A DNA stretch of 64,000 nucleotides, taken from positions 124,001 through 188,000 of IMG/VR virus record IMGVR_UViG_3300045974_000132; one strand, given 5' to 3'. How positions within the stretch are numbered: the first letter of the stretch is position 1; each line of letters begins with the position of its first letter. Of the stretch, positions 33,206-34,530 are shown piece by piece. The notes below the pieces were generated by a model. That model had not been told where the DNA came from. It worked only from the letters and a program-made list of their open reading frames with translations, and did not search any database. The position numbers and the translations under genes were made by a program.

Positions 33206-33590
33206 GCCGCTCACCTATTTTGGTAATAAGGACTCCGTCATTATCAGGAGAGTGAGCGGCTTAACAAACCAAAGTCTGTTAGTGACCCCATCCGTTTAGG
33301 TGCTGTTAGGCAGCCTTCCGGAAAGACGCATCATTCGCGGCAATTACAAGTTTAGCCCGGTTTAACGAGAGTACAATGCTCGGATCGTTCTTTATCAACT
33401 ACTCATGCCCAATCGAAACCAGGTCAGGCCCATCAGGATCGTTCTATGTATCACCCACCCCGGTGACCTCAGCCTTGCGGTAGGACCTTTCGGCACACAG
33501 AACGATTTTGGTGGACCTGGGGAGAATCGAACTCCCGTCTTGAACACTTTTATTTCAAAAGTCTCATAAGCAAAGTTGTTCCGGTAGCTA
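33206..33590 (-). ncRNA. ssrA: circularly permuted (two-piece) tmRNA
   Basis: T-arm and CAGGTCC-ACCA (33509-33540) lie upstream of the 5' strand GGGCCTG (33431); G3-U70 pair; tag ORF (A)ANDASFRKAA* at 33306-33341; outer boundaries approximate. Confidence 0.9.
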
Positions 33591-33646
33591 ATCGGCTTTA
33601 CTTACATACGATCATATTCCTTAACACGCCAATGATTACGTGTTAG

Positions 33647-34180
33647 TTAAGACCTACGCTTGATTGACATAAAGCCGATCATACCAAGGCCGGCAAACAT
33701 CATAGCGTAGTTCTCAGGTTCGGGCACAGAAGAAATGACGCTTGCTGCGATAGGAGCAACAAGTGACGCATCAATGTGACCGCCCAAAGCTTGGAAGGCA
33801 CCTACTTGATTACCATATAGTGTCAGCACAAACGGTGACTTGGTATTAACAGAGATAACACCAAAGTCAAAGCCCGGACCAGTAAGGATAGGGGCGCCGA
33901 AAGCACCATTCAGATTAGTCTTAGACCAATCAATGTTCAAGCCAGAACCACCGAAAGAGGATACAACATGATACGTACCCAGAACAGCAGTAGTCGGTAG
34001 CGTAAACGTAAATACGTCAGAGCCACCATCAAGAACAGAAGGTCCAAAGTTGGCGAAGTCAGCAACGTAACTCTTGGAAGCTGTGTCAAAAGACAAGCCA
34101 GAAGAACTATCCGATGCCCAAGCGCCTTGCAAACCCATTGACAGAACAAGGGCAACAAGCAGAGTTTTAAACCACTTCAT
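33647..34180 (-). CDS. PEP-CTERM exosortase-target surface protein
   Basis: Signal peptide MKWFKTLLVALVL...AWA; C-terminal VPEPENYAMMFAGLGMIGFMSIKRRS. Confidence 0.9.
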   Translation of the reverse strand: MKWFKTLLVALVLSMGLQGAWASDSSSGLSFDTASKSYVADFANFGPSVLDGGSDVFTFTLPTTAVLGTYHVVSSFGGSGLNIDWSKTNLNGAFGAPILTGPGFDFGVISVNTKSPFVLTLYGNQVGAFQALGGHIDASLVAPIAASVISSVPEPENYAMMFAGLGMIGFMSIKRRS

Positions 34181-34237
34181 TAAGAAATACTCCCTAGGTG
34201 AGTTGAAAAGAAATTTTATTATGTAAGTAAAATTGGG

Positions 34238-34450
34238 GAGAAGTGCTTGCCCTACTACTAAGAGGCTCGAAATGGACGATGAAACCAAAGCGAGATACAG
34301 GCTATTTTGAAAGTCGCCGAGACGACTTGTTAGCAAGCACTTCTCTTACACGGGTGAGAGGTATTGAACGTTTTCCACCGAAAGGAAAACCAACGAGGCA
34401 CAACGTACAGGCTATTTATCGTCGCCGAGACGACTAGTCCAATACCTCTC
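34238..34450 (-). ncRNA. two tandem related structured RNA modules
   Basis: 13 bp and 11 bp perfect closing stems; both contain AGTCGTCTCGGCGAC and AAATAGCCTGTA. Confidence 0.65.
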
Positions 34451-34455
34451 AAAAC

Positions 34456-34530
34456 TGGTTGAGGATGACGGGATCGAACCGACGACCCTCTGCTTGCAAG
34501 CAGAGGCTCTCCCAACTGAGCTAATCCCCA
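34456..34530 (-). tRNA. atypical tRNA-Ala(UGC), possibly pseudo
   Basis: U1-A72, G3-U70, ACCA; palindromic anticodon arm with a 6-nt loop TTGCAA. Confidence 0.75.

What the first reader, a model, noticed from the sequence alone, without database searches (positions are those of the whole stretch)
34238..34450. Twin RNA modules with a shared core but unrelated closing stems
Seen: both units contain the hairpin GTCG-TCTCGG-CGAC followed by AAATAGCCTGTA and later TTGGTTT, while their perfect closing helices differ almost entirely in sequence. This is natural covariation within one genome. They lie between tRNA-Ala and the PEP-CTERM gene. Inference: a functional motif, either a paired sRNA/aptamer or a tandem cis-regulator of the surface-protein gene.
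Basis: seen in the sequence. Interest (0 to 1): 0.65.

Follow-up and report, generated by a model that had tools for sequence, protein, structure and literature searches.

The report
Twin phage RNAs with pistol-like core
The two repeats are tandem copies of an uncatalogued family of structured phage RNAs that shares one hairpin-plus-linker module with pistol ribozymes and has tRNA-like ends, so it is a real and probably new RNA element whose job is still unknown.

Summary
Two units (34450-34356 and 34345-34238, minus strand) share a hairpin, AAATAGCCTGTA and TTGGTTT, and each is closed by a perfect helix. The helices are less different than claimed: they align, with 2 compensatory pair changes and 2 extra pairs.

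Pattern scans of viral, metagenome and genome collections found 37 further distinct relatives, nearly all on phage contigs. They define a family of 67-108 nt:
- a covarying closing helix that starts with G;
- a 3' tail, usually A-C-C;
- in about 30 members, a GAA/AGUA (sarcin-ricin-like) internal loop;
- an invariant hairpin AGUCG-NCUCGG-CGACU;
- an invariant strand AAAUAGCCUGUA;
- a variable arm.

The hairpin and linker match the P1 and linker of pistol ribozymes, the only Rfam family hit. Scores are 17-23 bits against a threshold of 34.5. The pistol pseudoknot partner, the P3/GU arrangement and the catalytic junction bases are absent, so these are not canonical pistols.

The ends (pyrimidine at -1, G at +1, stem, then A-C-C) copy those of tRNAs and of E. 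coli 4.5S RNA, a hairpin substrate of RNase P. My best guess (confidence 0.4) is a structured RNA cut from polycistronic transcripts by RNase P. Here it would be cut together with tRNA-Ala, as T4 matures its species 1 and 2 RNAs. A new ribozyme or a riboswitch remains possible.

The parts
34456..34530 (-). tRNA with alanine identity (G3:U70) and an encoded A-CCA end, 5 nt upstream of unit 2. Its anticodon arm is abnormal.
   Evidence: ARAGORN; Rfam tRNA 49.7 bits with alignment; 3' end read.
34356..34450 (-). Unit 2 (nearer the tRNA), 95 nt. It scores 37.8 bits against the family model R1.
   Evidence: Pistol (RF02679) sub-threshold hit of 22.9 bits over 34435-34389.
34440..34450 (-). Unit 2 closing helix, 5' strand GAGAGGUAUUG. 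It starts with G and is preceded by U.
   Evidence: Direct reading; MFE fold; termini statistics.
34421..34434 (-). Unit 2 P1 hairpin: GUCG-UCUCGG-CGAC.
   Evidence: aligned to pistol P1.
34406..34417 (-). Unit 2 invariant strand AAAUAGCCUGUA: the pistol-like A-rich linker plus CC-UGUA.
   Evidence: invariant or nearly so in 38 sequences.
34387..34393 (-). Unit 2 UUGGUUU. Its GGUU can pair with AGCC of the core. This feature is specific to a subtype.
   Evidence: It is shared with L024, L040 and L048. The pairing never varies, so it is untested.
34370..34390 (-). Unit 2 variable arm: a 7-bp hairpin GUUUUCC/GGAAAAC with a 7-nt loop.
   Evidence: MFE and centroid folds.
34356..34366 (-). Unit 2 closing helix, 3' strand CAAUACCUCUC.
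34352..34355 (-). Unit 2 single-stranded 3' tail A-CCC.
34238..34345 (-). Unit 1 (nearer the gene), 108 nt. It scores 32.9 bits against the family model R1.
   Evidence: Pistol sub-threshold hit of 17.0 bits.
34333..34345 (-). Unit 1 closing helix, 5' strand GAGAAGUGCUUGC.
34313..34326 (-). Unit 1 P1 hairpin: GUCG-UCUCGG-CGAC, extendable by A-U pairs.
34296..34307 (-). Unit 1 invariant strand AAAUAGCCUGUA.
34282..34288 (-). Unit 1 UUGGUUU.
34238..34250 (-). Unit 1 closing helix, 3' strand GCAAGCACUUCUC.
34234..34237 (-). Unit 1 3' tail C-CCA, the same N-CCA form as six of the window's seven tRNA genes.
33647..34180 (-). Downstream ORF, 177 aa, with a signal peptide and a PEP-CTERM tail. Its GGGAG ribosome-binding site is complementary to CUCCC at the end of unit 1.
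   Evidence: Translation; PF07589 at 21.6 bits against a cut-off of 20.7. The complementarity was read.
33306..33571 (-). Permuted tmRNA further downstream on the same strand. No promoter-like or terminator-like site lies in the non-coding stretch between the tRNA and the ORF start; one terminator-like site lies inside the ORF.
   Evidence: Rfam RF04321 at 89.3 bits; ARAGORN; promoter/terminator scan.

Best explanation
The two units are diverged tandem copies of an uncatalogued phage RNA family.

Architecture. Each unit folds into a closing helix whose first base is G and whose 3' strand is followed by an unpaired A/G-C-C tail. The helix encloses a junction with three parts: (i) a sequence-invariant hairpin, AGUCG-NCUCGG-CGACU; (ii) an invariant single strand, AAAUAGCCUGUA; (iii) a variable arm. 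Parts (i) and (ii) are homologous to P1 and the A-rich linker of pistol ribozymes. The rest of the pistol fold is missing.

Proposed mechanism. The module is transcribed as part of a longer RNA and cut out like a tRNA or the 4.5S RNA precursor. RNase P would cleave between the -1 pyrimidine and G+1, guided by the stem and the RCC tail, and the 3' side would be trimmed back to the tail. In the window this would release two stable RNAs of about 100 nt from a tRNA-Ala / unit 2 / unit 1 / PEP-CTERM mRNA precursor that may also include the tmRNA. T4 matures its species 2 and species 1 RNAs behind tRNA-Arg in the same way. In the other phages the same cut would separate two cistrons.

The invariant core would then bind a fixed partner that is still unidentified: a protein, a ligand or a conserved RNA.

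Shown: the family, its helices, the invariant core, the similarity to the pistol module, the signature at the ends, and the genomic contexts.
Inferred: cleavage by RNase P, stability of the product, and existence of a partner.
For: Family and structure
- 39 distinct members, counting the two window units, come.
- Model R1 scores them at 33-89 bits.
- 98.2% of helix cells are paired, and 7 of 13 pairs change on both sides.
- The covariation score is 0.371 against 0.114 in shuffles (0 of 500 reach it) and at most 0.087 in slid controls (for the 29-sequence seed).

Ends
- The first base is G in 37 of 38.
- Position -1 is a pyrimidine in 35 of 38.
- After the stem, +1 is A in 32 of 38 (a purine in 36), +2 is C in 35, +3 is C in 37, and +4 is never G.

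Comparators
- E. coli 4.5S RNA reads GGGGG...CCCCC-ACCC with U at -1.
- It is a hairpin-like RNase P substrate with a 3'-CCC end. Phage phi80 M3 RNA, P4 CI RNA and P1/P7 C4 RNA are described as structurally related substrates (PMC5499578).

Window context
- Unit 2 starts 5 nt after the tRNA's encoded ACCA.
- Unit 1 starts 6 nt after the tail of unit 2 and is itself followed by C-CCA.
- Six of the window's seven tRNA genes encode N-CCA.
- No promoter-like or terminator-like site lies in the non-coding stretch between the tRNA and the ORF start.
- The phage is T4-like: topoisomerase II, Dda-like and DnaB-like helicases.
- T4 has the same order, tRNA-Arg, rnaD, rnaC, with 1-nt and 6-nt spacers, and rnaD ends in ACCA.
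Against: - There are no expression or cleavage data.
- None of 36 other member loci checked holds a tRNA, so co-maturation with tRNAs is not the family's general setting.
- The tail is usually CCC or CCU rather than CCA.
- In the DUF927 group the tail also forms a hairpin with the downstream ribosome-binding site (CCCACC with GGGUGG). That offers a different reason for conserving the tail.
- There is no T-loop. About 30 members carry a GAA/AGUA internal loop in the closing stem that tRNAs lack.
- RNase P processing explains the ends but not why the core is invariant.
- A pyrimidine at -1 followed by G+1 would also fit a ribozyme that cleaves at its own 5' edge.
Confidence: 0.4

Rival explanations
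1. A new self-cleaving ribozyme variant derived from, or ancestral to, pistol. It would keep P1 and the linker, build its active site from the three-way junction, and cut the polycistronic RNA between genes.
For: - Pistol is the only non-tRNA Rfam family, among 4227, that stays below E = 2 on all four members tested (E 0.049 to 1.1; the other matches have E 2.4-9.5): 22.9, 17.0, 20.1 and 20.6 bits.
- The family consensus AGUCG-GCUCGG-CGACU-NUAAAUAG is identical, apart from the first three loop bases, to two canonical pistols in L085 that score 68.4 and 67.3 bits.
- Those pistols and seven type II hammerheads lie in intergenic gaps; the two pistols read lie just upstream of a ribosome-binding site. 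That is the same kind of place the family occupies.
- The conserved pyrimidine at -1 and G at +1 would also suit cleavage at the 5' edge.
Against: - All scores are below the gathering score of 34.5.
- No partner for the P1 loop exists in any conserved position within 200 nt either side, and CCGAGC occurs only at chance frequency in the loci.
- Canonical loops covary with their partner (UCCCGG with CCGGGA; ACUCGG with CCGAGU). The family loop is fixed, even when the search pattern left it free.
- There is no P3 followed by a strictly 2-nt junction and then P2.
- The AAG and GCG catalytic junction bases are replaced by UGUA (pistol numbering recalled from the literature; the general features are from PMC4604425).
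- No other ribozyme family scores, even at E up to 10.
Confidence: 0.2
2. A riboswitch-like or other cis-acting translational regulator of the ORF immediately downstream. The junction would bind a ligand or a protein, stabilise the closing helix, and so free or hide the ribosome-binding site. The window would then carry a tandem pair.
For: - Where a downstream ORF could be called (32 of 38 units), it starts 10-61 nt after the element on the same strand in all but one case; for unit 2 the called ORF is spurious and what follows is unit 1.
- The pattern of an invariant junction with covarying stems is aptamer-like.
- In the DUF927 group the last bases of the closing helix plus the tail (CCCACC) pair with the ribosome-binding site GGGUGG. 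This pairing and the closing helix are mutually exclusive (read).
- In the window, CUCCC at the end of unit 1 is complementary to the GGGAG site of the PEP-CTERM gene.
- Tandem aptamers are known for some riboswitch classes (general knowledge).
Against: - The downstream genes share no common function: a helicase, a DUF927 protein, an 88-aa unknown, a PEP-CTERM protein and others.
- The anti-ribosome-binding-site hairpin is seen only in one gene group, yet the tail is conserved in all groups.
- Unit 2 is followed by unit 1, not by a gene.
- The elements lie a few to about 25 nt (in most members read) after the stop codon of an upstream ORF.
- No terminator-type expression platform is present.
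Confidence: 0.2
3. A trans- or cis-acting antisense RNA of the P1 C4 / P4 CI kind. RNase P would process it, and its loops would then pair with targets in the same operon.
For: The ends resemble hairpin-type RNase P substrates, which include C4 and CI. The gene lies directly upstream of ORFs in the same transcript.
Against: - The complement of the P1 loop is not enriched in the loci and has no conserved position.
- The variable region pairs no better with its own flanks, 100 nt either side, than with the flanks of unrelated members: mean z is +0.43 downstream and +0.16 upstream.
- The Rfam C4 family does not score.
Confidence: 0.05
4. A recent tandem duplication without function, or a chance resemblance.
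For: The two units are clearly duplicates of one another (and direct reading).
Against: - The pattern is expected 0 times by chance.
- 37 further distinct relatives occur, nearly all on unrelated phage contigs, with an invariant core and compensatory helix changes.
- Within the window, the interiors of the two units have diverged while the core stayed identical.
Confidence: 0.02

Closest known systems
Pistol self-cleaving ribozyme (Rfam RF02679)
   Same: Both have a 5-bp P1 hairpin with a 6-nt loop ending in GG, followed by the A-rich linker (A/U)UAAAUAG. Apart from the first three loop bases, this is identical to two canonical pistols found in a phage contig (L085). Both occur in phages, in intergenic gaps just upstream of genes.
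   Different: The family has no pseudoknot partner for the P1 loop, no P2/P3 internal-loop arrangement, no 2-nt GU junction and no AAG/GCG junction bases. Instead it has a closing helix (often with a GAA/AGUA loop), a three-way junction and an RCC tail. Scores are 17-23 bits against a threshold of 34.5.
Hairpin-type RNase P substrates: E. coli 4.5S RNA precursor, phage phi80 M3 RNA, P4 CI RNA, P1/P7 C4 RNA
   Same: Both have a terminal stem that starts with G, a pyrimidine at -1 and an unpaired A-C-C(C/A) tail. The commonest family ends, GGGGG...CCCCC-ACCC, are letter for letter those of E. coli 4.5S RNA. Both lack a T-loop. Several of these substrates are phage-encoded (PMC5499578).
   Different: The interiors show no sequence or structural homology (no Rfam SRP or C4 hit). 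No antisense targets were found. Cleavage by RNase P is untested.
Phage T4 species 2 and species 1 RNAs (rnaD, rnaC)
   Same: Two small stable RNAs of 119 and 139 nt lie in tandem directly behind a tRNA gene in a T4-type phage. They are separated by a few bases, and rnaD ends in ACCA. Their function is unknown.
   Different: No detectable homology: model R1 finds nothing in the T4 locus at E up to 1. rnaC has a tRNA-like T arm that the window units lack.
Small H-type pseudoknot aptamers such as preQ1-I (comparison recalled from the literature, not tested)
   Same: A 5-bp hairpin is followed by a 7-8 nt A-rich strand and then CC, which could pair with the GG at the 3' end of the loop. The single variant of that CC (CU, in L065) would keep a G-U pair.
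   Different: Only 2-3 pairs are possible, and essentially no covariation is available to test them. The family is about three times larger and has extra helices.

Membership tests
Pistol ribozyme (RF02679) | Score at or above the Rfam gathering score (34.5 bits) | tested here: not met
   Window units score 22.9 and 17.0 bits, L024 20.1 and L088 20.6. Canonical pistols in L085 score 68.4 and 67.3.
Pistol ribozyme (RF02679) | P1 hairpin followed by the conserved A-rich linker | tested here: met
   The cmscan alignments match nearly every upper-case consensus position of P1 and AUAAAUA. The same letters occur in the L085 pistols.
Pistol ribozyme (RF02679) | [quoted passage not shown] | tested here: not met
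   No complement of the loop (wobble allowed) lies at any conserved position within the units or 200 nt either side, in 38 members. The L085 pistols have perfect 6-bp partners that covary.
Pistol ribozyme (RF02679) | P3 hairpin followed by a strictly 2-nt junction (usually GU, the cleavage site) and the 3' strand of P2 | tested here: not met
   The cmscan alignments skip the 22 model positions of P3 and the GU. Between AGCC and GGUU there are only 11-18 nt without a hairpin.
Pistol ribozyme (RF02679) | Self-cleavage by internal phosphoester transfer | not testable with these tools
   Needs an in vitro transcription and cleavage assay.
Hairpin-type RNase P substrate (4.5S precursor, C4, CI, M3) | Terminal helix beginning with G+1, unpaired leader, pyrimidine favoured at -1 | tested here: met
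   G+1 in 37 of 38 and a pyrimidine at -1 in 35 of 38. The helix is supported by covariation.
Hairpin-type RNase P substrate (4.5S precursor, C4, CI, M3) | Single-stranded R-C-C-(A/C) directly after the helix | tested here: met
   A or G at +1 in 36 of 38, C at +2 in 35, C at +3 in 37. The 4.5S RNA comparator was read. Its 3'-CCC end is noted in PMC5499578.
Hairpin-type RNase P substrate (4.5S precursor, C4, CI, M3) | Cleavage by RNase P at -1/+1 | not testable with these tools
   Needs an enzyme assay or 5'-end mapping in an RNase P-depleted host.
C4 / CI antisense immunity RNAs | Loops complementary to target sites in the same operon | tested here: not met
   Loop complement occurs at chance frequency. 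Duplex test of each member against its own and unrelated flanks shows no signal.
T4 species 1 / species 2 RNAs | Tandem small RNA genes directly after a tRNA gene in a T4-type phage | tested here: met
T4 species 1 / species 2 RNAs | Sequence or structure homology to rnaC or rnaD | tested here: not met
   Model R1 finds nothing in the T4 locus L015 at E up to 1. Rfam hits differ.
tRNA | Cloverleaf recognised by ARAGORN or the Rfam tRNA model | tested here: not met
   Neither tool calls the units. Only the acceptor-like end is shared.
Riboswitch (generic) | Conserved aptamer whose closing helix competes with an expression platform | tested here: inconclusive
   The conservation pattern is aptamer-like. 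A competing hairpin with the ribosome-binding site occurs only in the DUF927 gene group. Ligand binding cannot be tested here.

The most novel reading that the evidence does not exclude
The family is a new functional class of phage RNA built on the pistol P1-linker module. It would be either a new self-cleaving ribozyme class with a different active site, or a ligand- or protein-sensing element. It would also record how pistol ribozymes arose from, or decayed into, a non-pistol fold.
Probability: 0.3. Interest if true: 0.85.

Novelty: new variant of a known kind. Interest (0 to 1): 0.62.

Why it matters
Small ribozymes and structured RNAs in phages are common, but their functions are largely unknown.

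- This family has at least 39 distinct sequences, counting the two window units. It is far commoner in the viral collection than canonical pistols with the same P1, which occur on a single contig.
- It shows that the pistol P1-linker module exists in nature outside the pistol fold, in at least three architectures: the canonical pistol, this family, and the L093 variant.
- This gives a testable handle on what the module does by itself and how a ribozyme class evolves.
- The tRNA/4.5S-like ends suggest that phages reuse the host's RNase P to cut structured RNAs out of mRNAs.
- In a T4-like jumbo phage this offers a parallel to the T4 species 1 and 2 RNAs, whose function is, as far as I recall, still unexplained after some 50 years.

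If the RNA cleaves itself or binds a ligand, it would be a new ribozyme or riboswitch class.

Tried and rejected
- **Close DNA relatives.** A blastn search of 3 kb around the site against 50,697 deposited phage genomes matched only the tRNA.
- **Neighbouring proteins.** Searching for relatives of the two flanking proteins returned only the source contig.
- **Patterns with the window's own loop.** TCTCGG...AAATAGCCTGTA and GTCGTCTCGGCGAC...AAATA gave only the source contig and chance hits in coding DNA.
- **Canonical pistol fold.** Threading by hand and by cmscan found no pseudoknot partner, no P3 and no GU.
- **HDV-like, hammerhead, twister, twister-sister and hatchet.** I considered the HDV-like, hammerhead and twister cores by reading the sequence. 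No Rfam model for any of the five scored, even at E up to 10.
- **Homology with T4 rnaC and rnaD.** None.
- **Extra diverged copies.** Searching the window and 60 loci with model R1 found none; only the window has two.
- **Antisense targets.** None for the P1 loop or the variable arm.
- **Promoter or terminator next to the units.** None. The bases upstream of the 5' G (often UUAC or UUUU) are too short and too variable to be a phage-polymerase promoter.
- **A conserved partner for UCC-UU / UUCACAU in the 3' junction.** I looked by eye and found none.
- **Literature.** Searches for pistol variants, pistol permutations, new ribozyme classes and RAGATH motifs found no description of this RNA.
- **Loop left free.** It gave one new member (L168) and showed the same loop in all true members seen.

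Full report
**Observation**

All ORFs and all eight tRNA/tmRNA genes of the window lie on the minus strand, so I read the finding on that strand. The order is:
- a tRNA (34530-34456);
- a 5-nt spacer;
- unit 2 (34450-34356) with tail ACCC;
- a 6-nt spacer;
- unit 1 (34345-34238) with tail CCCA;
- 53 nt of A/U-rich spacer after the tail (57 nt after the helix);
- an ORF starting at 34180;
- a permuted tmRNA (33571-33306).

Both units contain GUCG-UCUCGG-CGAC, AAAUAGCCUGUA and UUGGUUU. Each is closed by a perfect helix, of 11 and 13 bp. The joint pattern occurs twice in the window and never in 100 shuffles. Mismatch-tolerant searches found no third copy. Both units fold much better than shuffled versions (z = -5.2 and -4.3).

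They align base for base, with two compensatory pair changes and two additional pairs.

**What the window is**

The window is part of a 286-kb viral contig, IMGVR_UViG_3300045974_000132. It carries topoisomerase II subunits, a Dda-like helicase and a DnaB-like helicase, so it is a T4-type jumbo phage. The downstream ORF is a signal-peptide protein with a PEP-CTERM tail.

**Relatives**

Neither a blastn search against deposited phage genomes nor the neighbouring proteins led to relatives. Patterns that fixed the window's own loop did not either.

Patterns built on the other conserved pieces did:
- L024 from the viral collection;
- L038, L040 and L048 from metagenomes;
- about 30 further distinct sequences from the viral collection, and one from a betaproteobacterial MAG;
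- one more, L168.

This gives 39 distinct sequences of 67-108 nt, counting the two window units.

**Family anatomy**

Most members (about 30; 29 form the seed alignment) have this order:
1. an outer stem, GGGG(G)/CCCC(C);
2. an internal loop with GAA(A/C) facing (N)AGUA;
3. an inner stem of 2-9 bp;
4. a 0-6 nt joiner;
5. the hairpin AGUCG-GCUCGG-CGACU;
6. the strand (N)UAAAUAGCCUGUA;
7. a variable hairpin;
8. a semi-conserved strand, often UCC-UU or C-UUCACAU;
9. the 3' strands of both stems.

[quoted passage not shown] That it pairs with GAA is recalled from the literature.

Nine members, including both window units, have an uninterrupted closing helix of 8-15 bp instead.

On the 29-sequence seed (A3), 98.9% of helix cells pair, and all four inner-stem pairs show changes on both sides. 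On the 39 sequences aligned to model R1 (A4):
- 98.2% of cells pair;
- 7 of 13 pairs change on both sides;
- the covariation score is 0.371 against 0.114 in shuffles, reached by 0 of 500 shuffles;
- slid controls reach at most 0.087.

That alignment was fitted to the model, which favours the structure. The seed result does not depend on that fit.

The hairpin never varies. This is partly because some patterns demanded it. However, scans that left the loop free returned the same stem and loop in every true member, except for the first loop base: U in the window, G elsewhere.

The window units are the lowest-scoring true members (37.8 and 32.9 bits). They form a divergent subtype together with L024, L040 and L048, which share UUGGUU.

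**Relation to pistol ribozymes**

Pistol (RF02679) is the only non-tRNA Rfam family that stays below E = 2 in all four members tested; the few other matches have E of 2.4 to 9.5:
- 22.9 and 17.0 bits for the window units;
- 20.1 bits for L024;
- 20.6 bits for L088.

All are below the gathering score of 34.5. The alignments cover P1, the AUAAAUA linker and a few bases of P2, and they skip P3.

One pattern hit, L085, carries two canonical pistols (68.4 and 67.3 bits) and seven type II hammerheads within 6 kb. Their P1 and linker, AGUCG-NNNCGG-CGACU-CUAAAUAG, match the family letter for letter. Their loops, however, pair perfectly with a downstream partner and covary with it: UCCCGG with CCGGGA, and ACUCGG with CCGAGU.

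In the family no such partner exists at any conserved position within 200 nt either side. The complement CCGAGC occurs only at chance frequency across the loci. The features that define pistols are three stems, the pseudoknot, and a strictly 2-nt junction holding the cleavage site (PMC4604425). Of these, only P1 and the linker are met.

The units are therefore not canonical pistols. They share a module with pistols, most simply by common descent. L093 uses the same module in a third arrangement, again without a pseudoknot partner.

**Ends**

Across 38 sequences:

| Position | Result |
|---|---|
| First paired base | G in 37 |
| -1 | pyrimidine in 35 |
| +1 after the helix | A in 32 (purine in 36) |
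| +2 | C in 35 |
| +3 | C in 37 |
| +4 | C 20, U 12, A 6, never G |
| Beyond +4 | A/U-rich |

This is the signature of a tRNA acceptor end.

The commonest form, GGGGG...CCCCC-ACCC, is identical to the two ends of E. coli 4.5S RNA, which also has U at -1. 4.5S RNA is a hairpin-like substrate of bacterial RNase P with a 3'-CCC end. Phage phi80 M3 RNA, P4 CI RNA and P1/P7 C4 RNA are described as structurally related substrates (PMC5499578).

In the window, six of the seven tRNA genes encode N-CCA, and unit 1 is followed by C-CCA. The spacers between tRNA, unit 2 and unit 1 are 5 and 6 nt. No promoter-like or terminator-like site lies in the non-coding stretch between the tRNA and the ORF start.

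T4 has the same layout: tRNA-Arg, rnaD, rnaC, with spacers of 1 and 6 nt, and rnaD ends in ACCA. No homology with those RNAs is detectable.

**Context in other phages**

Where a downstream ORF could be called (32 of 38 units), it starts 10-61 nt after the element on the same strand in all but one case; for unit 2 the called ORF is spurious, because what follows is unit 1. The stop codon of an upstream ORF lies a few to about 25 nt before the element in most members read.

Downstream genes include:
- a ResIII/DEAD helicase of about 495 aa;
- a DUF927 primase-helicase-like protein of about 955 aa;
- an 88-aa unknown, and others.

Each locus has one copy, and 36 other member loci checked hold no tRNA.

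Hosts are probably Betaproteobacteria. One member lies in a betaproteobacterial MAG. Five loci carry the Betaproteobacteria-1 RNA about 1.3 kb upstream.

In the DUF927 group, the last bases of the closing helix plus the tail pair with the ribosome-binding site just downstream. This is not seen in the other groups.

**Mechanism**

I commit, at confidence 0.4, to a transcript-embedded structured RNA that RNase P cuts at its 5' G and that is trimmed at the RCC tail. In the window this would yield two RNAs of about 100 nt from the tRNA-containing precursor. In the other phages it would separate two cistrons. The invariant core would bind a fixed, still unknown partner.

This explains the ends, the spacers, the strand, the lack of own promoters or terminators, and the T4 parallel. 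It does not explain the core.

Two rivals each keep about 0.2:
- **A new self-cleaving ribozyme.** It is favoured by the pistol homology and by the ribozyme-like genomic position. It is disfavoured by the missing pseudoknot and catalytic bases.
- **A riboswitch-like translational regulator.** It is favoured by the position upstream of ORFs and by the competing hairpin in one gene group. It is disfavoured by the unrelated downstream genes, and by unit 2 having no gene of its own.

An antisense RNA of the C4/CI kind is unlikely. Chance is excluded.

**Novelty**

No Rfam 15 family other than Pistol comes close (its hits have E of 0.05 to 1.1; the other matches have E of 2.4 or more). Literature searches for pistol variants, permutations, new ribozyme classes and RAGATH motifs found no description of this RNA.

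I rate it a new variant of a known kind, because it is a pistol-related phage RNA with RNase P-substrate-like ends. There is about a 0.3 chance that it is a functionally new class.

Noticed in passing
window 34456-34530 (-): The tRNA upstream of the units has the alanine identity pair G3:U70 and an encoded ACCA, but an abnormal anticodon arm. Infernal aligns a 5-bp stem with a 6-nt loop UUGCAA, one base short. ARAGORN instead reports a 4-base anticodon 'tgca'. It could be a defective or an unusual-decoding tRNA.
   Followed up: partly
window 33306-33571 (-) (ARAGORN: 33215-33601): A permuted (two-piece) tmRNA lies in a T4-like jumbo phage: Rfam RF04321 at 89.3 bits, tag peptide AANDASFRKAA.
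   Followed up: no
window 33647-34180 (-): A phage-encoded secreted protein has a PEP-CTERM sorting tail (PF07589 at 21.6 bits, cut-off 20.7). This signal normally needs a host exosortase.
   Followed up: partly
L085 3742-9597 (IMGVR_UViG_2744054895_000001): An array of 2 canonical pistol and 7 type II hammerhead ribozymes lies within 6 kb, spaced roughly every 650 nt, presumably between small genes (gene layout not checked). The two pistol loops and their pseudoknot partners covary.
   Followed up: partly
L058 2909-3032, L063 3640-3760, L065 2198-2323, L068 3348-3468, L071 9897-10017: Betaproteobacteria-1 RNA (RF02932, 86-91 bits) lies about 1.3 kb upstream of the new motif in the phages where the motif precedes a helicase gene.
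   Followed up: no
L093 36-64 (-): A third architecture uses the same hairpin (loop GCUCGG) and linker. They are followed by GCCG, UUUUAA, a CGCCC/GGGCG hairpin and CGGC. This resembles pistol P2/P3 but has no pseudoknot partner and no GU junction.
   Followed up: partly
window 29593-50123 (-): Seven tRNA genes are scattered singly among small ORFs over 20 kb rather than clustered, and six of the seven encode CCA.
   Followed up: partly
L040 2076-2100, L051, L061, L073, L086-L088 (just 3' of the motif): In members upstream of the DUF927 gene, the motif's tail (CCCACC) and the ribosome-binding site (GGGUGG) form a short hairpin that would compete with the motif's outer stem.
   Followed up: partly
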